From Dimorphilus gyrociliatus (lineage: Eukaryota; Animalia; Annelida), in contig CAJFCJ010000019.1 of the NCBI GenBank assembly GCA_904063045.1, positions 1,441,700 to 1,505,699 on the forward strand: 64,000 bases of DNA. Direction: 5' to 3'. The position numbers and the translations under genes were made by a program. A model generated the notes under the pieces. That model was not told the DNA's origin. It saw nothing but the letters and a program-made list of their open reading frames with translations, and ran no database searches. The stretch's first letter is position 1, and every line of letters starts with the position of its first letter. Shown here piece after piece: positions 706 to 15,323 of the stretch.

Positions 706-3700
706 CTAGCACCTTCTCTTAGATGCTGCATGTAGTCTAGGAAACTTGTTATTATTAACGCCGTCAGGTAGATCATCTGTTTGAAAAATATAATAATTAA
801 TTAACCATGGCTCCTTTAGGTAGTAACTAATTTGACTCAGTTTTCTTTGGTAATTTGATAAATATTATTTATAAATTATGATATAAATTAATATTCCATT
901 GATTAGTCATAAAATAGTGAATCAATAAAAGATATCCTACCTAGACACCTGTAGCTCAACTGCGAAAATATAACCTTTTCTTGTGAAAATACTAGAAGAC
1001 CTAGACTACCTCCGATAAATGTTGTATCCTTTAAGTGACCAGAATCTATTATTCTAACGCTACCGTCGAAAATTTGTAATCTAATATAACCAAAGTCTGG
1101 TCTATGCTGTAATTTCCATTTATAAGATCTTCGCATTTTCCATGAGATACCATTTGAATCTTTCCATAGAGTTGTTGTTTGCCCAGGAACACTAAAACTA
1201 TGCCATAATGAATTTCTCATCATAGGTCCCGGTCCAGTTCCTGAGTGAACAACTTTAATATGAACACCTGGTTCAGCAACTGCTCTAAAAGGAGTGTTTT
1301 CCCAATAGGTCTGTTTTCCTCTCTTCCACATAACAGCGTAGAAGTGACTGCTATTTGTATAGCCAAATACAAGACCGGCATAATCATTGTCAACTTTAGA
1401 GTCAACGTAGAATGTTCCATCAAAGTCAACGCCAGCAAAACGATGATATCCGACAAACAAACCAGGGTCACTGTTAATATGCTGTATAACTTCGGCTCCG
1501 TTATCCCTAATATCCCAATCTGGATCATCTTGGGAGTCCTCTGTAGGAATAGATTAAATCAGTTTGAAAAATTAAGACAAATCGTCAGGAATAAAGGATA
1601 ACCTTTAGGATCAAGCATAATCTGGGTATAATTTCTAAAATCAGTATCAAATATTTCTTTATTTCTGTAGCAAACGTCCAAATGGTCTGGCTGATTGTCA
1701 CCGTCACAATCCTTGTCACAAGCATCACCTTGACCGTCGTTATCGGCATCGCGTTGGTCCGGGTTATATACTAAACGGCAATTGTCGTTATCATCTAGAA
1801 TTTTATCGTTATCATCATCAGGATCACACTCATCGCCCATTCCGTCTCCATCCGTATCCAATTGATCTGGATTTCTGTGATCTGGACAATTATCATTTCT
1901 ATCTGGTATGCCGTCTCTATCCCTATCTGAAAAGCCTTCACAAGCGTCTCCAATCCTATTTTTATTATTATCTGCTTGATCTTTATTAGGTTCATCAGGG
2001 CAGTTATCACAGGCGTCACCGATGCTGTCTTTGTCTCTATCCAATTGGTGCCGATTTTTCACATAAGGACAGTTATCATTTTCATTAAGTATTCCATCAT
2101 TATCGATATCGCTATCGCACGCATCACCTACGCCGTCACGATCCATATCATTTTGATTTTTATTTGCTTTGAATTTACAATTGTCGCAAACGTCGCCTAT
2201 TCCATCTTTATCCTAACATTTCATTGCAAACTAGACTTATTTTTTAAATCTTATTTAAATCGTACCTGATCTCTTTGATCCTTATTGGGGATATATGGAC
2301 AATTATCGTCCGCATTACGTATACCATCATTGTCTGAGTCATCTTCACATGCGTCACCCACACCGTTATTATTTACATCTTCCTGACCACTATTTGGGAC
2401 TGTGGGGCAATTGTCCCTTCTACAGTTGGCTTCTGGACATTGTAAGGAAGTGTCGGGGAAGCCATCTTCGTCAGTATCAAGTCCGCAAATTTTGCCATTA
2501 CCAGCATAGCCCGGCTTACAACGACACATATAGCCGCTCTGTCCGTACATTAGAACGCATTCTGCGTTACTTCCGCAAATAACTTTACCATCAGGACATA
2601 GTCCCTCTTTCCTTTTACAACCGTATAATTGATTTCCTTCGTAGCCAAATTTACACTCTCCACACCTGGATGATCCAGGTGTGTTTATACACTCGGAATT
2701 GGCCGTACAACCACCATTGTTTATCATGCACTCATTAATATCTGTGCAAATTTGTTTTTTTCTTCTTGCATCAACTGATAAAAAGATATACAGTATCATA
2801 AGACAAACTTCTAGTACTGATTTGAAAAGAATTGAAAAACCTACGTATGCCTATTCCCTGAAACGCTGAACCTGTATAACCGCTAGGACATTCCGTGCAT
2901 CGATAACCAGGCTGTAAATTAATACAAGTCGTTAACCTGTCGCAAGGTTGTTCCTCTCGGCACTCATCAATATCAATACAATTAACGCCGTCTCCCTTTG
3001 TTCCTAATGGACAGTCGTCACAAACATATCCATTAGCTGTGTCCCGGCATTTAACCCCAGAGGCACAAGGATTCTCAGCACATCTGATAGGTCGACATAT
3101 TTTACCATCGCCACTAAATCTTTTTGGACACTTTTGACATTCATAACCGTTAGGAGTGTCGATGCATTTCATTCCATTTGGACAACGATGAGTCTCGCAT
3201 TTAATAGGTATACAACGCCTAGTAGGATCACCAGTAAATTTGTCTGGACAGGATCCACATATTGGTCCATTAGGTGTATTAGTGCAAGTAACTCGGTAGT
3301 CACACGGGGGTCTATTGCTTGGGTAGTTTTCGCAGGTGATTTGTTTACAGTTTCGACCATCTCCCCAATAACCTCGAGGACAATCTCCGCACCTCGGACC
3401 ATATAGAGTATCTTCACACTCCACATTATGATAGCAGGGTTTAGGAGCATCAGAACATTTTCTTAATCGACAAACTATACCATCTCCAATTAATCCGGCC
3501 GGACACTTTCCACAAACTGGCCCATGTTCAGTATCCCGACAATCAACTCGTAAGTCACAAGGTGGTCTTTGACTAGGATAGTCGTTACATCTGATTTTGC
3601 GACAATCTCTTCCGTCTCCCCAGTACCCTCTAGGACATGAGCCACACTTTGGCCCAAAATCAGAATCTCTGCATTCAACACCAGAAAAGCAGGGTGAAGG

Positions 3701-5097
3701 AGAGTCGTTACATCTTCGGGCTCTACACACTTCGCCATCACCAACTAATCCAGGAGGACAAGATCCACATCTGTAGCCTGAAGATAGATCTTCGCAGCGA
3801 ACATCCAAGAAGCATGGATTGTCTCTACAACTTATTGGCCTACAACCATTGGGTCCAATACCATGACCAGTATAGCCAGTAGGACAGGGTCCACACCTTG
3901 GACCACTAGCCTCATTGTAGCAAACAACCCCCCGGTAACAGAATGTGTCATCGTCACAAGTAACTTTACGGCACCCGCCTCTTCCAATAGCATCTCCAGT
4001 AAATCCCATCGGACATGGCCCACATTTGAAAAATCCTCGTCTTTTATCTAAATCAGTGCAAGTTGTGTCAGGATAGCAAGGTCTATCCCGACAAGTCCTC
4101 ATTCTTTCACATCCTCTTGGACCAACACCGTCTCCGACATATCCATCTGGACATCTTCCACACATAAAACCTCCACTGACTAGTTCAAAACAGCGAACTC
4201 TATTATAACATGGGCTACTCTCGCAGGCGGTGTTCCGTTGACAGACTCGACCGTTACCAACATAACCATCAGGACATGGCTCACATTCAAAGAGTCCGTC
4301 TTCTTTATTATAACATTTACCAAAGCAAGGATGATCATCGCAAGGACGGTACCTGTAACATTCTCGACCATTTCCAGAATAACCTCTAGGACAGGGTCCA
4401 CATTCGTATCGTCCATCACTAAGATCTCTACATTCAACACCTTTGAAGCATGGATTTCGTGCACAGGCTGACATTGGTTGACAGTTTACACCATTTCCCT
4501 CATATCCATCCGGACATCTTCCACATCTATATTCTCCATTATCTAAATCTTCGCATACAACGCCGTCAAAGCAAGGACGTTTGCGGCATGCTCTTTCAGG
4601 AACTTCTATACAAACTATACCATTGCCATAATAACCTCTAGGGCATGGACCACATTCATAGCGGCCACCATCTAAATTCCTACACCTAACCCGTCGATCA
4701 CAAGGATTACTATCGCAACCCCGAATTTCGCGACAATCTCTTCCGTCTCCATGATAGCCCTCTGGACATCTACCACACACAAAACCTCCATCGTCTCTAT
4801 CTTCGCAAGCTACCCCATGAAAGCAAGGTCGTCTAGAGCATGGTCTAATACGTTCGCATTCTTTTCCATTTCCCACAAAGCCTGAAGGACAATCGCCACA
4901 TGTATATGATCCGTCATCATGATCCTCGCATGTAACACCGGGAAAGCACGGCCTTTGAGAAGCACAAGGACTAGCGTCTTTACATAAGTCGCATTTGGAT
5001 AGCAGTAATCTCAAATTTCTAGTCTCAACTGCTTGGTTCCTCATATCTGCTTGAAGATCTCTCAACGCTCTTACAAGATCGTTAGAGTTAACTTGAG
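706..5097 (-). CDS. Thrombospondin (subgroup B/COMP-like): coiled coil + CxxC, 19 EGF-like domains, type-3 Ca-binding repeats, C-terminal L-lectin domain
   Basis: Exons (minus): 5097-2845, 2774-2266, 2212-1603, 1540-941, 776-706, all with GT-AG boundaries and consistent phases. Motifs: DLVRALRDLQADMRNQAVETRNLRLLLSKCDLC (pentamerising coil + CxxC), DxDxDGxGDACD type-3 repeats, DSQDDPDWDIRDNGAEVIQHINSDPGL and DNDYAGLVFGY...FYAVMWK (TSP C-terminal domain). The signal-peptide exon lies upstream and is uncertain. Confidence 0.95.
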
Positions 5098-5539
5098 CTG
5101 TGTAAATGAATAGCTTGTTAATATTAATTAATTCAAATTAGTATCAAATTAATAGAAAGAAAATACAATTAAAACAAGGTGAAGGAAACTTGAATTTTTT
5201 TATATGAGTTAAAAAACTCTAATTATATGTTTGTTATTAATGTAATATAATGTATTCTTATTGCAGATATACAGCAAATAACTGACAGATTGAAGAGGAT
5301 AGAGAGGGGTGAGAAAAAAAACGAAGCCAACTTTTTAATCTAACCATAACGCAGCTATTTTTCATAGATTCGAGTTGGTGTTGAAAGTTTTAGAACTAGG
5401 TTTTTGTTGCATAGGGAAACTAAATTGCTAGTCTATTTTTAAAACTGTACAATTTGCTTTAGCTGAAAGCATATTTTCTATCATGTTTTTCTTTGCCAAT
5501 GGCAAAAACTATTACAAACAAAATTTACTTGTACTTAAC

Positions 5540-8062: not shown

Positions 8063-11000
8063 TTATTTAACTGTCTCTTGCTCTAGTTTCTTTGCCTGCA
8101 TAAAGAACCGATTAACATTCTCTGCAAGAGCCATCGCTCCTACGTTCTTCTCTCTTTCGCGGCACTCTTTCTTATTACAATTAACGATCCAATTTTCCAT
8201 GATATCCCTCTTCAAGTTGATAAATTTTGTTCTAATTATACTCCAGAAGGTATTCGACTATATATAATCATACAATAATACTATAAGATAAATTTTGCTA
8301 AATTGGAAGAAAAGAAAATTATCTTACATTTTTGCCACTTGTTTTCTTGTAAATAATGTCTAGTACCCATTCCAAAATTACTATACCGAAAGCTGTTCCG
8401 CATCCAATGAATAATATCCAAAAAGCCCCATAAATTGATGGAACGCCAATTTTTACGGTATTTGAACTTATATCTCCATTGGATTTATCAAGACAGATTG
8501 AAGTTTTAGAAATCCATCTGTCCCCTATCGCATCTACTTCACCACTCTCTCTGATATTATATATACTAATTGTTAATTCTTCAACATATGGAGAATCTTT
8601 TGGTAAGGCTATACCGTAACCCATATTTTCAAATCCACTTTCGACAACTTTTAAACTGCATTCTTGTCCTAATGTATAAAATATAATAAGAAACACTATC
8701 TGTATTTACTCTATATAGCATTTAATAAAATATTTATAACTACCTTTCCAGTATTGAATGGAAGGCATATCGTAAATGAACGCGAACGACCCATTCTCAT
8801 GGATAGCTTTGTCAACACACTCCTTTGCACTTTTACAATAATTGTTCTTCTCCCTCATTCTCTTACTCATTTTTCTGACATGTATAAATAATTTATATCA
8901 CACTATTTTTTCAAATTTATCCTATTCATATTACTTTTTACGTACTTGTATGGTTCTCTAGCTGATGAATCAAAAAATGATTGGACGTGATGGCCTGAAA
9001 CCGTTCCATAATTGACATCGCCTCTATTTGCTAACTCGGAAATCGCTTTTATTTCATCAGCCGATGATTTGACGGTTAAAAAGGCTGCTAAATTAGCCGT
9101 GTAAGACTGGATGATAATTAGGGCACCAAGCCACCATGCTCCGGCTACTATTTTACTAGATATAGATCTTGGGTGCCTTTCACCTCCCTGTTCGAACAAG
9201 GATGCTAAGCTCCATAGAACAGCATTATGAACACTCATTGTATTCTTATCTTCTAACCACTCTCTTTCTTCCCAATAATCAATTGTGCCATCCTCATTCT
9301 TATCCATAGCTTCCAGTTCACCATCATTCATAACTTGAGATTTTCTACCTAAACAATAGAGTAAACAGTCGATTAAAAATTTATAAACAACACAAATTTA
9401 ATTCAAGGGATTTACCATGATGCCCATAAGGGCTAACTTTTTCAATCAAACTAATGACAAGTCCAAGAATAATTGCAGTAAGGAGAGTTAATACCCAAAG
9501 CCTATTCGTGAAAGGGTTTAAAAAAGACCAAGGATCGTAAGACGTTTCTTTACTTGAACCCAGAAGTATACCCATTTGAAGGTCTCTAAAAGGCTTTGTA
9601 AATTCAATATGTTGCTGTCTTTCATATGTTATACTAATCGCTCCTATTCCCATATCAGCTTTCTATATATAATGGTAAACGAAAGGAAAATTGAGACTTT
9701 TAACGGAAATAGATCACCTACGGCTTTTCCACTGTCGTCAACTATTAATTCACCCATAAGGCCATCCCATTTTTCCGTTTTTCGGTCAAAAACCCCATAA
9801 TAAGAAGCTTCATGCAGAACATAATTAAATGAGTGTATCTTGGATAATTCATTTAATAAATCGATTGCGAAGCCAGTGAAGCATTCGTTTCCGGTACATG
9901 TCGATTTTGTGGTGTTATTTGGTCGAGTAATGAATATAAATGGCGGATCCTTTAAAAGTTTGATAATTAATCTCTCTTACTATTACTATTTTTATTACTA
10001 TCTCTATTTTTAGTTTTAAAATCAAACCTCCACAACTGCAACCCTTAAAGTTCGATTAACTAATTCTCCCACGTAGTCTCTTATATCCATCAAAGGTGTT
10101 CCACCAGAAACCGTGACTCCAGTAGCATTAATTTTCATTACCTCGTTATTATCATTGTTCTTTGGTGACGTCCATTCACCAAACTTTTAAAAAAAGATAA
10201 TCTAGAACAACTATTTATACCATAATTTGATATAAGAAACCTTTTCCCACCCTTCCTCTCTTAAGAAGACATAATCGTACGATGAACTGTATGGTGATCC
10301 ATTCGAATTAAATCTAATACGTTTCTTGGAAACTCCAGGAATATCTGTCTGCAATTTTTTTTCCAGAAAACCGTTAATTAAATCTATTTTAAGCTGTTTA
10401 AATAGTTATTATTACTTTTTTCAAAGCGTCTAACATCTTTTCCCCAAATTCCCATTGTTTAGCAGGTATTTCAAAACAATCTAATTTGGCAGTTGTTAAA
10501 TTTTCACTTTCAACTTCTAAGAGTCGGTGTAAAGCATTTGCTAATACGTATACTGAATCATAGAAAGCTGCGGCGTATCCCTTCAAAGAAAAGTATAATA
10601 ATAGAATCTATTTGACATAAAAAAGAAAGCTTCTTAAACATACAGAGAGAAAAGAATCATTTCCCAAGTGAAATTTCTCTTGTAAAAATATAGATTTTTC
10701 CGGTAATGCCGGTCTTAAGCCAACTAGACCTTTAAATTCTCTCCTATCCAGTCCTTTGAAAATATCCTAAGAAGAGAATACCTTTGTTTATGCTTATATA
10801 TTATCAGGAAAAAAAACCATACGAACCGATTCAGTTACTCCATCTGTGCCTATCCAAAGCCACCCTTTCGCCAACATGTTCAATTTCTGAGCTTGAACGA
10901 TTATTTCAACAGCATGATCCGGCAAACAGTGTAAAATGACAACTTTCGCACCTATCATTAAATAGTAGAATACTCGAAATTGTGTATATAATTGAGTTAA

Positions 11001-11844
11001 AACCTGAATTTTTAATTTGTTGTAATTGAGCAATTACACTTATTTTCATCAGTTTAGTGTTGAATCTTTGAACAGTTATAATTTTCCACTTTCTTGTTGC
11101 AGCCATGGATTGAAACGCTGATAACCCATTTATACCTTAAAAACGAAAGAAAAATTTACGGCTGTTGTTAATTAGCCTATCTTTGATAAGAAAAAAATCT
11201 TATTCACCATAGTCAGTATTATCAGTTAACATAGCCATGGTATCCCATCTAAAATAACTAATGAAATCTACTAGTGCAGCACTTTGCTTATTATCCGGAG
11301 ATGCCATTCGTAATAGGTATTTGTAAGCTGCCGTATTCTATTCAATAGAATAAATATTAGATTGTAGTTGTAAAGAATATAATTATTTATACTCGAAGCA
11401 TTGGATCGGTTGCGCTAGGTGATATCATGGGCATGTGTAAGCCTAAACACAGGGGATGAGAAGACTTAACGGTTGTGGTTGTCATTGGTCCTAAAATGCT
11501 GACAATTTCCATCTTCATCAATTCGCAGACAGATTCAATGGCTTCGTATTTAGAAAGCATTGAACTATTAACCCCAAGCATTTCAAGTTTATAATTAGGT
11601 AGCAAGCTTGTATCGTTATTTAAATGTTTTACAGCTATGTCTAAAACTGATTTATAAAAGGGATCTTCTTCAGGTAAAACAGCTCCTAATAAAAAAAATA
11701 TGTAAATATTATATAATAATCTTTTCTAATCAAGAAAATACGTAAATAAAAATTTATAGGTATAAATTACGAACCAAACTTTATGGTTTTCTCTCCAAAA
11801 ACCCCATTTAGAAAAGTAAGTGTAATTAGAAAAATATTTATCAT
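8063..11844 (-). CDS. Ionotropic glutamate receptor family subunit (AMPA/kainate/delta-like architecture with amino-terminal domain)
   Basis: Signal peptide MINIFLITLTFLNGVFG (ATG 11844). LIVBP-like ATD (GAVLPEEDP..., SILGPMTT, SPSATDPML). S1 GAISITYERQQHIEFTKPF. M2 WSLASLFEQGGERHPRSISSKIVAGAWW. M3 SYTANLAAFLT. S2 FAFIYDMPSIQY...GYGIALPKDSPY. M4 IYGAFWILFIGCG. Last exon ends ...EQETVK* at 8063. Confidence 0.95.
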
Positions 11845-14092: not shown

Positions 14093-14288
14093 ATTACCTA
14101 TCTTATTTTTAGTTTTGTCTCGTAATTACTTTGTTAACTGTTTTGTCTAAAAAGAGTAGAGTTATAAAAGTTATTTAAGTTTTACATTTTTATTAATTAT
14201 ATCAAAAATGCTTTGTGTTGAAATCCAGCTATATTTGTCTTTCAAAACAAGCAAAATCAAGTTCAGAGTATAAAGAAGTCTTCTTATT

Positions 14289-15323
14289 TTATTTCTTACA
14301 ATTACCATTCGGACATTGACTCCTTTCTGGCCCAGCCAAAGGGACATCCCTCTCGTCCCAAACTGTCACACCATCGCAAGCACAAATTCTTTTAGTATTT
14401 TCAAATAAACCTGACGAACGTGCAATAATTCCGCAAACCTGACTAAAAATATTGACAATTTTTAAATTAAATAGTTAGATAGTTGATATTCTGTTTACCG
14501 ATTTTTCGCAGAATCGTGTAAGACTAGTGAACGACCAATGAGGCTATATATAGGGAATTTATCTTTTTCCACTCGAAATTCAAGTCGACCATTATTCGAA
14601 GACTCAGCTTCAACAACTGGGTAAAAGCTTTTTTGATTTTTTTGAAATATATCTCCACAACTAAGAATTAACAGCATTTCTAATTTATTTGTACAATAGA
14701 AAAGAGTATTATTTTTATCATTACCTTTGACACCCTTCGGATAAATCTCCAAGTTCGTGAACAAATAGTTTATGCATTGTTTTTGGTCTTAAACCATCAA
14801 TTGTTCCTTCAATAATACAGCTTTCGTTTTCCATCTGAACCAATCGAGTAACACCTTTACTATTAGCATTTGACATCATACAGACAGCAGCAGAGTTTAT
14901 TTCTGAAAGAATAGAAAAGAATTATATTTAAATAAATAAGAGAGAGAGTAAAGTACTTACTTTTGTCACCAAGACCCTGTAAAACTGCTCTTTTGCCTGT
15001 ACTTTCGATTGTTTGCAACACTTTTGTTGAAGGTAGTGATGAGCTTACAACTAATCGTTGATATTTTAAATCGACACTTAATATGTCTATATTATCTAAC
15101 TTAGAGAGAGCATTTCGAATAGATGTTTCGCAACTTTCACACTTCATTTCAACAACAAATTCCATCTAAAATCAAAATAACTCTTTATCGCTCAGTCATT
15201 TTATATGTCCATTGATTATATAAAATTTTGTGAAATTACTTGTTAAAATTTTTGAATAAACACAAAACAAGTGTTATTTATTGAATATATAATCAAGATA
15301 TTACTTACTGTTGCTTTTGCCAT
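14289..15323 (-). CDS. CCS: Copper chaperone for superoxide dismutase
   Basis: MAKAT|MEFVVEMKCESC (ATX1-like MxCxxC), SOD-like domain II (IEGTIDGL...VHELGDLSEGCQSCG, LIGRSLVL, CGIIARS), domain III KRICACDGVTVWDER (CxC). Confidence 0.93.

What the first reader, a model, noticed from the sequence alone, without database searches (positions are those of the whole stretch)
9240..9345. EF-hand-like Ca2+-binding loop inserted in the cytosolic M1-M2 linker of an iGluR
Seen: after splicing, the linker is ...EKVSPYGHHG|RKSQVMNDGELEAM-DKNEDGTIDYWE-EREWLEDKNTMSVHN. The 12-mer at 9269-9304 has D1, N3, D5, G6, I8, D9, E12, the canonical EF-hand loop, between helix-like segments. It misses only the hydrophobic residue at position 13 of the PROSITE pattern (E here). 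Established: the M1-M2 linker is intracellular next to the pore, and EF-hands are not a standard iGluR feature. Inference: together with the acidic Q/R/N site, this may be a Ca2+-permeable channel with a built-in Ca2+ feedback sensor; four single hands could pair within a tetramer.
Basis: partly seen in the sequence, partly recalled or inferred. Interest (0 to 1): 0.8.

Follow-up and report, generated by a model that had tools for sequence, protein, structure and literature searches.

The report
Calcium-sensor-like loop inside a glutamate receptor
A glutamate-gated ion channel of the tiny marine worm Dimorphilus carries, on its inner face right next to the pore, a short loop that looks like a classic calcium-binding EF-hand; other worms and a ribbon worm keep the same loop, so the channel may sense calcium directly, which I found described for no receptor of this family.

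Summary
The window is Dimorphilus gyrociliatus. The 12-mer DKNEDGTIDYWE (aa 608-619, window 9269-9304) lies in the cytoplasmic M1-M2 linker, 12 residues before the M2 pore helix.

It is not chance. The same loop occurs in orthologues from Owenia, Paralvinella and the nemertean Tubulanus, and in five unplaced genomic fragments. D1, N3, D5, G6, D9 and E12 are invariant, position 8 is I or V, and positions 2, 4, 7, 10 and 13 vary.

A profile of the linker alone finds almost only EF-hand proteins in the PDB (troponin C, E=6.5e-4). AlphaFold2 predicts a short helix, the loop, then a helix starting at loop position 10. ESM Atlas structural neighbours are mostly EF-hand families. Pfam EF-hand models score below threshold.

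The receptor is not AMPA-type. It groups with named Epsilon-subfamily receptors, which are known to carry an M1-M2 insertion. I found no paper describing an EF-hand in any iGluR.

Calcium binding, feedback on gating and pairing of hands across subunits are untested. Verdict: a real, conserved and apparently undescribed variant.

The parts
8063..11844 (-). Whole iGluR gene, 15 coding exons, product 948 aa (= CAD5123268.1, DgyrCDS11627). Signal peptide, ATD, LBD, M1-M2-M3, S2, M4, C-tail.
   Evidence: Exact exon map of P0163 on the window. Pfam ANF_receptor 37-371, Lig_chan-Glu_bd 427-544, Lig_chan 563-860.
9435..9506 (-). M1 transmembrane helix (aa 563-586).
   Evidence: Hydropathy. AlphaFold2 helix 563-586, pLDDT 86-92.
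9349..9415 (-). 67-nt phase-1 intron inside the codon of G593 (donor G|GTAAAT, acceptor TTTAG|GT).
   Evidence: Same junction as in the public protein.
8945..9348 (-). Exon 12 (aa 594-727). One exon encodes the EF-like loop, pore helix M2, M3 and the start of S2, so skipping this exon would also remove the pore.
   Evidence: In all other genomic fragments the loop and M2 also lie in one ORF. Against a relative with 87.6% nt identity: 42 synonymous and 5 non-synonymous codon differences.
9308..9319 (-). Short entering helix ELEA (aa 603-606). M607 just before the loop is invariant.
   Evidence: AlphaFold2. Alignment A1.
9269..9304 (-). 12-residue EF-hand-type loop DKNEDGTIDYWE (aa 608-619).
9245..9277 (-). 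Exiting helix (aa 617-627, starting at loop position 10), with invariant W618 and W623. A 4-residue turn follows, then M2.
   Evidence: AlphaFold2 helix 617-627, pLDDT 80-83. Invariant columns. A Trp at the W618 position is also present in Trichoplax Epsilon linkers.
9164..9232 (-). M2 pore helix and selectivity filter (aa 632-654). Q/R/N-site residue E645 is at 9191-9193, and the +4 acidic residue is E649.
   Evidence: HMMER alignment to GluA2. AlphaFold2 helix 632-643.
9062..9163 (-). M3 helix with the SYTANLAAF gating motif (aa 655-688).
8340..8444 (-). M4 helix (aa 846-880).
8186..8248 (-). Conserved basic amphipathic helix after M4 (aa 888-908, ending ...D-x-x-x-N-W). It is cytoplasmic. 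A role as partner of the linker is pure speculation.
   Evidence: Invariant D902, N906 and W907 in four orthologues. AlphaFold2 helix 888-908.

Best explanation
The segment encodes a genuine, selected, single EF-hand-type metal-binding site built into the cytoplasmic M1-M2 linker of an Epsilon-subfamily ionotropic glutamate receptor. Shown: the sequence, the splice and its position. The loop follows M1 by about 20 residues, and its exiting helix ends 4 residues before the M2 pore helix. All side-chain ligand positions (D1, N3, D5, D9, E12), G6 and the hydrophobic position 8 are kept in annelids and a nemertean. The linker resembles solved EF-hands by profile and by predicted structure. Inferred: the loop binds cytosolic Ca2+. 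The most probable source is Ca2+ entering through the receptor's own pore, whose Q/R/N site carries E or Q. Closing of the bidentate E12 on the ion would move the exiting helix, which is tethered to M2, and so change gating, conductance or block. That would make it a built-in Ca2+ feedback sensor, doing in cis what calmodulin does in trans on NMDA receptors. Because EF-hands normally work in pairs and the chain has only one, hands of neighbouring subunits may pair. The loop seems to have been assembled on a pre-existing Epsilon linker helix, because the Trp at loop position 11 is already present in placozoan Epsilon linkers.
For: Exact sequence and splice. Conservation: nine aligned linkers have invariant M-1, D1, N3, D5, G6, D9, W11, E12 and W16, with position 8 I or V, while positions 2, 4, 7, 10 and 13 vary. 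Named orthologues are Owenia, Paralvinella and Tubulanus. A Tubulanus paralogue with a same-length but degenerate loop (V1, A3, T6, D12) shows what relaxed selection looks like. Purifying selection at codon level: 42 synonymous versus 5 non-synonymous codon differences in the exon, and 9 versus 1 in aa 600-630, with none non-synonymous in the loop. A profile of the linker against 177,635 PDB sequences returns EF-hand proteins in 59 of the top 60 hits: troponin C 6.5e-4, SCaMC-1 1.4e-3, CDPKs, hippocalcin, lanmodulin. The best local match is to troponin C site IV. AlphaFold2 gives helix 603-606, the loop, then helix 617-627 starting at loop position 10, with pLDDT 66-83. For ESM Atlas structure neighbours of residues 596-632, 6 of 10 rows are EF-hand families, TM 0.50-0.63. 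The chance expectation is 3e-4 per linker. Cytoplasmic location follows from the standard iGluR topology and the domain order found. E645 aligns to the GluA2 Q/R site.
Against: No metal-binding or electrophysiological data exist. Pfam EF-hand models reach only 12-15 bits against cut-offs of 25-32. The entering helix is only about 4 residues long, and no second EF-hand exists in the chain, so an isolated hand could bind weakly. Foldseek and VIA-align on the 51-residue model found no EF-hand, and the model is too small to be decisive. Invariant W11 and W16 are not EF-hand features and point to an additional or different constraint. The ligand set D-N-D-D-E is that of troponin C site IV, a site that is constitutively occupied by Ca2+/Mg2+ rather than regulatory (textbook knowledge). 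Transcript evidence could not be obtained.
Confidence: 0.5

Rival explanations
1. It is a real metal site but a structural one. The site would be permanently occupied by Ca2+ or Mg2+ (like troponin C sites III/IV or parvalbumin) and needed for folding, tetramer assembly or ER export of the receptor, not for acute feedback on gating.
For: The ligand pattern D1-N3-D5-D9-E12, with acid pairs on two axes, equals that of troponin C site IV, which is the best local match of the profile. The site is conserved as strongly as core channel motifs.
Against: A site 12 residues from the pore helix of a channel with E or Q at the Q/R/N site is placed where Ca2+ changes most. A purely structural role does not explain why the rest of the Epsilon subfamily does without it.
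Confidence: 0.2
2. It is a conserved protein- or lipid-interaction motif that only resembles an EF-hand. An acidic turn followed by a Trp-rich amphipathic helix would dock on the inner leaflet, on the conserved post-M4 helix or on an auxiliary protein, without binding metal.
For: Invariant W618 and W623 are atypical for EF-hands. A Trp at the W618 position is shared with placozoan Epsilon linkers that lack the loop. Pfam EF-hand models are sub-threshold. The entering helix is minimal. A conserved cytoplasmic helix after M4 exists as a possible partner.
Against: It does not explain why exactly the five side-chain ligand positions, G6 and the hydrophobic position 8 are kept while the interleaved positions vary. 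It also does not explain why a profile of the linker retrieves EF-hand proteins almost exclusively, or why structure neighbours are EF-hand families.
Confidence: 0.2
3. It is a chance motif or an annotation artefact. The segment would be non-functional, or not part of the mature protein because of an internal splice site or a mis-called exon.
For: No RNA reads could be laid. The public protein is a predicted CDS.
Against: Third-position-biased divergence (42 synonymous versus 5 non-synonymous) shows in-frame coding constraint through the linker. The loop lies in the same ORF as M2 in every genome fragment found. It is conserved in two phyla. The chance expectation is 3e-4.
Confidence: 0.03

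Closest known systems
Epsilon-subfamily iGluRs (GluE; Ramos-Vicente et al. 2018, PMC6307864; Trichoplax GluE1alphaA study, PMC12226733; ctenophore receptors with a Cys-rich M1-M2 loop)
   Same: Same architecture (ATD-LBD-TMD, SYTANLAAF). The receptor groups with named Trichoplax GluE1alphaC, GluE1gamma and GluE3betaA (names from the supplement of PMC12226733). It carries the insertion in the M1-M2 intracellular loop that the eLife paper gives as the one noticeable trait of Epsilon proteins. It has an acidic residue at +4 of the Q/R/N site.
   Different: The insertion here is a canonical EF-hand-type loop. Neither paper mentions an EF-hand (0 occurrences). Other Epsilon linkers (Branchiostoma, Ptychodera, Anneissia, Trichoplax, and paralogues in Owenia and Tubulanus) lack it. 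The Q/R/N site is E in most members of this clade.
Canonical EF-hand loops, in particular troponin C site IV and calmodulin-type hands
   Same: A 12-residue loop with D1, N3, D5, G6, hydrophobic 8, D9 and E12. The exiting helix starts at position 10. There is a hydrophobic residue before position 1. The profile match has E=6.5e-4.
   Different: It is a single hand with no partner in the chain. The entering helix is about 4 residues long. Trp at positions 11 and 16 is invariant. Pfam models score below cut-off. The hand is embedded between two membrane segments of a channel. It may have arisen in situ rather than by descent from an EF-hand domain.
Ca2+-dependent inactivation of NMDA receptors through calmodulin binding to the GluN1 C0 region (textbook knowledge)
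   Same: This is the proposed logic: Ca2+ entering through an iGluR acts on EF-hands at the cytoplasmic face and feeds back on the same channel.
   Different: In NMDA receptors the sensor is a separate protein that binds the C-tail. Here the sensor would be part of the pore-forming subunit, next to M2. Function is unproven here.
Channels with EF-hands in their own chain, such as plant TPC1 and polycystin-2 (from general knowledge, not tested here)
   Same: A cytoplasmic EF-hand within the pore-forming subunit.
   Different: These are unrelated channel folds. Their hands come as pairs or lie in terminal domains or long linkers, not in a loop leading directly into a re-entrant pore helix.
AMPA receptors (nearest solved structures: GluA2, GluA1)
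   Same: They are the best PDB sequence matches for M2-M3 (E=1.5e-21), and public names are 'glutamate receptor 2-like'.
   Different: The tree places the gene outside the AMPA and kainate clades. The GluA2 linker is about 19 residues shorter, and its alignment to the query begins only after the loop.

Membership tests
EF-hand Ca2+-binding motif | 12-residue loop with oxygen ligands at positions 1, 3, 5, 9 and 12 (Glu), Gly at 6 and a hydrophobic residue at 8 | tested here: met
   DKNEDGTIDYWE in the window. The same ligand set is present in all 10 distinct loop-bearing sequences.
EF-hand Ca2+-binding motif | Full PROSITE PS00018 pattern, including a hydrophobic position 13 (pattern recalled from memory) | tested here: inconclusive
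   The window protein has E at position 13 and fails. Owenia (V), Paralvinella (L), Tubulanus (I), P0002 (I), P0003 (M) and P0029 (M) pass. P0004 and P0011 have Q.
EF-hand Ca2+-binding motif | Score above the gathering threshold of a Pfam EF-hand model | tested here: not met
   EF-hand_5, EF-hand_6 and EF-hand_STIM1 score 11.8-15.4 bits against cut-offs of 25-32. I therefore call it EF-hand-like, not a Pfam-defined member.
EF-hand Ca2+-binding motif | Helix-loop-helix, with the exiting helix starting at loop position 10 | tested here: met
   AlphaFold2 gives helices 603-606 and 617-627, and the same pattern for the linker alone. ESM Atlas neighbours are mostly EF-hand families. The entering helix is very short.
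EF-hand Ca2+-binding motif | Similarity to solved EF-hands beyond chance | tested here: met
   Linker profile against the PDB: 59 of the top 60 hits are EF-hand proteins, with a best whole-sequence E of 6.5e-4. Single-stretch E-values are weaker, 0.17.
EF-hand Ca2+-binding motif | Occurs as a pair of hands | tested here: not met
   There is only one pattern match in the 948-aa chain. Pairing between subunits cannot be tested with these tools.
EF-hand Ca2+-binding motif | Binds Ca2+ | not testable with these tools
   This needs ITC, Tb3+ luminescence or a structure.
Epsilon subfamily of iGluRs | iGluR architecture: ATD, bipartite LBD, M1-M2-M3-M4 and the SYTANLAAF motif | tested here: met
   Pfam ANF_receptor, Lig_chan-Glu_bd and Lig_chan. 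The motif is at aa 674-682.
Epsilon subfamily of iGluRs | Falls in the clade of receptors named Epsilon in the literature | tested here: met
   IQ-TREE gives a 17-row clade with SH-aLRT 100. It holds Trichoplax GluE1alphaC (P0015), TRIADDRAFT_55165 = GluE1gamma (P0032) and the GluE3betaA cluster (P0162), and it is separate from the AMPA (lamprey, bird, fish) and kainate (rat GluK5) clades. Names come from the PMC12226733 supplement. Caveat: the tree contains no NMDA or Lambda sequences.
Epsilon subfamily of iGluRs | Insertion in the M1-M2 intracellular loop | tested here: met
   The linker is about 19 residues longer than in GluA2. The trait is stated in PMC6307864.
AMPA receptors | Falls in the AMPA clade | tested here: not met
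   It lies outside the clade holding the lamprey GluA4-like, Tetraodon and bird receptors.

The most novel reading that the evidence does not exclude
This would be the first ionotropic glutamate receptor with an intrinsic Ca2+ sensor. Ca2+ entering through a pore with E or Q at the Q/R/N site binds four pore-adjacent EF-hands, which pair across subunits under the channel. Through the 4-residue tether to the M2 helix, they inactivate or potentiate the channel. This self-contained feedback device would have evolved in spiralian Epsilon receptors by building a binding loop onto an older linker helix.
Probability: 0.3. Interest if true: 0.8.

Novelty: new variant of a known kind. Interest (0 to 1): 0.66.

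Why it matters
Ca2+-dependent regulation of glutamate receptors is central to synaptic plasticity. As far as is known, it always works through separate proteins such as calmodulin, CaMKII or calcineurin. A receptor that carries its own EF-hand beside the pore would be a compact natural model for how a cytoplasmic loop couples to the iGluR pore helix. It would give a first functional handle on the M1-M2 insertion that marks the little-studied Epsilon subfamily. It would also be a clean example of a Ca2+ site assembled in place on an existing helix. The idea can be tested directly with one cDNA, two point mutants and standard patch-clamp recording.

Tried and rejected
1. RNA support. The look-up of sequencing runs gave four runs. 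So there is no read evidence.

2. Foldseek against the PDB and VIA-align wide on the 51-residue linker model returned only generic helical hairpins (E >= 5.5, Z <= 3.6). They are uninformative at this size.

3. The word search with the four-orthologue alignment was swamped by 8000 candidates and returned only distant iGluRs, so the taxonomic range could not be widened that way.

4. The metagenome scan with the loop pattern gave 287 pattern matches, none confirmed by tblastn.

5. Pfam EF-hand models score sub-threshold only.

6. AMPA, kainate and Delta-like membership was considered and rejected by the tree.

7. Exon skipping as a way to lose the loop is rejected, because the loop shares its exon with M2 and M3. 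An internal acceptor is not excluded.

8. Five full-text searches (four on EF-hand plus iGluR terms, one on Dimorphilus glutamate receptors) and term look-ups inside two key papers found no report of an EF-hand in an iGluR.

9. The organisms behind fragments P0002, P0003, P0004, P0011 and P0029 could not be named. They come from ENA and Logan assemblies without taxon labels.
Full report
**What is there.** The window has 33.5% G+C. Between 11844 and 8063 on the minus strand it carries a 15-exon gene. Its product is, residue for residue, the public Dimorphilus gyrociliatus protein CAD5123268.1 (DgyrCDS11627, P0163, 948 aa).

Pfam finds ANF_receptor (37-371), Lig_chan-Glu_bd (427-544) and Lig_chan (563-860). 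Hydropathy and AlphaFold2 place the membrane segments as follows:
- M1 at 563-586
- the M2 pore helix at 632-643
- M3 at 655-688, with SYTANLAAF at 674-682
- M4 at 846-880

The exon ending ...SPYGHH plus one base (9416) is joined over a 67-nt GT-AG intron (9349-9415) to the exon starting at 9348. This gives G593 followed by RKSQVM....

The 12-mer DKNEDGTIDYWE is aa 608-619, at 9269-9304. With the standard iGluR topology, where the N-terminal domains and S2 are outside, the M1-M2 linker is cytoplasmic. That step rests on established knowledge of the family, not on a test here.

**Is it more than chance?** A relaxed 12-position EF-loop pattern is expected 3e-4 times in a linker of this size and 0.008 times in the whole protein. 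Among 196 collected iGluR sequences it occurs 11 times, always at this homologous site and nowhere else.

The word search and the exhaustive representative search found the loop in these sequences:
- a close relative (P0001, 96% identical)
- five unlabelled genome fragments (P0002, P0003, P0004, P0011/P0164, P0029)
- three named full-length proteins: Owenia fusiformis (DKNEDGTIDHWE), Paralvinella palmiformis (DTNEDGSVDYWE) and the nemertean Tubulanus polymorphus (DTNEDGEVDEWE)

In the alignment of nine linkers, M-1, D1, N3, D5, G6, D9, W11, E12 and W16 are invariant. Position 8 is I or V. Positions 2, 4, 7, 10 and 13 and the first half of the linker vary. That is the pattern expected if the Ca2+ ligands are what selection keeps.

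A second Tubulanus gene (P0008) has a loop of the same length that has lost D1, N3 and G6 and has D at position 12. It also has a long extra insert and a changed filter. It shows what decay looks like.

Against a relative with 87.6% nucleotide identity (L004), the exon shows 42 synonymous and 5 non-synonymous codon differences. In aa 600-630 the counts are 9 and 1, with none non-synonymous in the loop. So the segment is translated in this frame and constrained. This partly replaces the RNA evidence I could not get.

**Does it look like an EF-hand to unbiased tools?** Pfam EF-hand models hit several members but only at 12-15 bits, below their cut-offs.

A profile built only from the nine linkers, searched against all 177,635 distinct PDB sequences, returned EF-hand proteins in 59 of its top 60 hits. 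These include the troponin C C-lobe (E=6.5e-4), SCaMC-1 (1.4e-3), CDPKs, hippocalcin, lanmodulin and KChIP. The one exception was a glycoside hydrolase. The best local alignment is to troponin C site IV. Single-stretch E-values are weaker (0.17), so this counts as significant but not overwhelming.

AlphaFold2 on the linker alone gives a helix, the loop, then a long helix starting at loop position 10, with pLDDT about 80 over the loop. In the full-length model (mean pLDDT 85) it gives helix 603-606, loop 607-616, helix 617-627, a 4-residue turn and then M2. pLDDT there is 66-83.

The ESM Atlas's own model of this protein, searched with residues 596-632, has EF-hand families in 6 of the 10 listed structural neighbours (TM 0.50-0.63). 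TM values mean little for such short stretches, but the enrichment is telling. Foldseek and VIA-align on my small model found nothing useful.

**What kind of receptor is it?** The nearest solved structures are AMPA receptors, and their alignment to the query starts only after the loop. The linker is about 19 residues longer than in GluA2.

Trees (FastTree, 102 rows; IQ-TREE LG+C20, 42 rows) put the five annelid and nemertean sequences in one clade (support 100). That clade sits inside a larger clade (support 100) with amphioxus, Ptychodera, the crinoid Anneissia, loop-less paralogues from Owenia and Tubulanus, and four Trichoplax proteins.

Three of those Trichoplax proteins, or their cluster mates, are named GluE1alphaC, GluE1gamma and GluE3betaA in the supplement of PMC12226733. 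AMPA (lamprey, fish, bird) and kainate (rat GluK5) receptors form separate clades. The gene is therefore an Epsilon-subfamily receptor. The caveat is that my tree holds no NMDA or Lambda sequences.

[quoted passage not shown] So the insertion is known and its EF-hand content here is not. Neither that paper nor PMC12226733 contains the word EF-hand, and the full-text searches found no report of an EF-hand in an iGluR.

An alignment of Epsilon linkers shows a Trp at the position of W618 in placozoan receptors as well. This suggests that the exiting helix is older than the loop, and that the binding loop was built onto it in a spiralian ancestor. That is an inference.

**How it most likely works.**
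- Shown: a conserved EF-type loop on the cytoplasmic side whose exiting helix is tethered by four residues to the pore helix. E645 lies at the Q/R/N site and E649 at +4. Orthologues have E or Q at that site.
- Inferred: the site binds Ca2+ that enters through the pore. Closure of E12 on the ion repositions the helix and thereby M2, giving Ca2+-dependent modulation. Lone hands of neighbouring subunits may pair. I put this at about 0.5.
- Rivals: a permanently occupied structural Ca2+/Mg2+ site (0.2; the ligand set equals troponin C site IV), a metal-free interaction motif (0.2; the invariant Trp residues, the sub-threshold Pfam scores and the very short entering helix speak for it), and chance or artefact (0.03).

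**Limits.**
- No RNA reads. 
- The taxonomic range beyond three annelid families and one nemertean is unknown, because the last word search and the metagenome scan failed.
- No coordinates of the models were available to check ligand geometry.
- The earlier notes of the scan hold nothing on this feature elsewhere.

Noticed in passing
window 9191-9193 (E645) and 9179-9181 (E649), minus strand: The Q/R/N selectivity site carries Glu and the +4 site is also Glu. Orthologues have E (Owenia, P0002, P0003, P0004, P0011) or Q (Paralvinella, Tubulanus, P0029). The Tubulanus paralogue with the decayed loop has G at this site. This is the subject of a separate first-reader note (s1-084546).
   Followed up: partly
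window 8186-8248, minus strand (aa 888-908): A conserved basic amphipathic helix follows M4 directly (invariant D902, N906, W907 in four orthologues) and is predicted helical. It could be a calmodulin-type target site or a partner for the linker. No Pfam match.
   Followed up: partly
P0006 (Anneissia japonica), P0036 (Ptychodera flava), P0139 (Owenia), P0170 (Tubulanus): Epsilon-clade receptors appear in a crinoid echinoderm, in annelids and in a nemertean. The 2018 eLife classification reported the subfamily as lost in echinoderms and protostomes, although a later paper already found it in Capitella.
   Followed up: partly
window 3002-5137, minus strand: A long, more G+C-rich open frame of Cys-rich repeats has Pfam COMP coiled-coil and EGF_3 matches, so it looks like a thrombospondin/COMP-family gene next to the iGluR.
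   Followed up: partly
window 14174-15165, minus strand: There is a small gene whose first exon is a heavy-metal-associated (HMA) domain. The following exons look SOD-like by eye, so it is probably the copper chaperone for superoxide dismutase.
   Followed up: partly
P0168-P0191 (Logan/ENA proteins of 660-780 aa): A tight group of unlabelled iGluR-like proteins has the pore motif TPQGGGEAP, long acidic M1-M2 linkers and no ATD match in the precomputed Pfam lists. They form a long-branched clade beside coral sequences in the trees. Their identity was not pursued.
   Followed up: no
L001 13274-13576, minus strand: A small EF-hand protein gene (weak EF-hand_6 and EF-hand_7 hits) lies about 5 kb from the orthologous receptor fragment P0003. 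This is probably coincidence.
   Followed up: no
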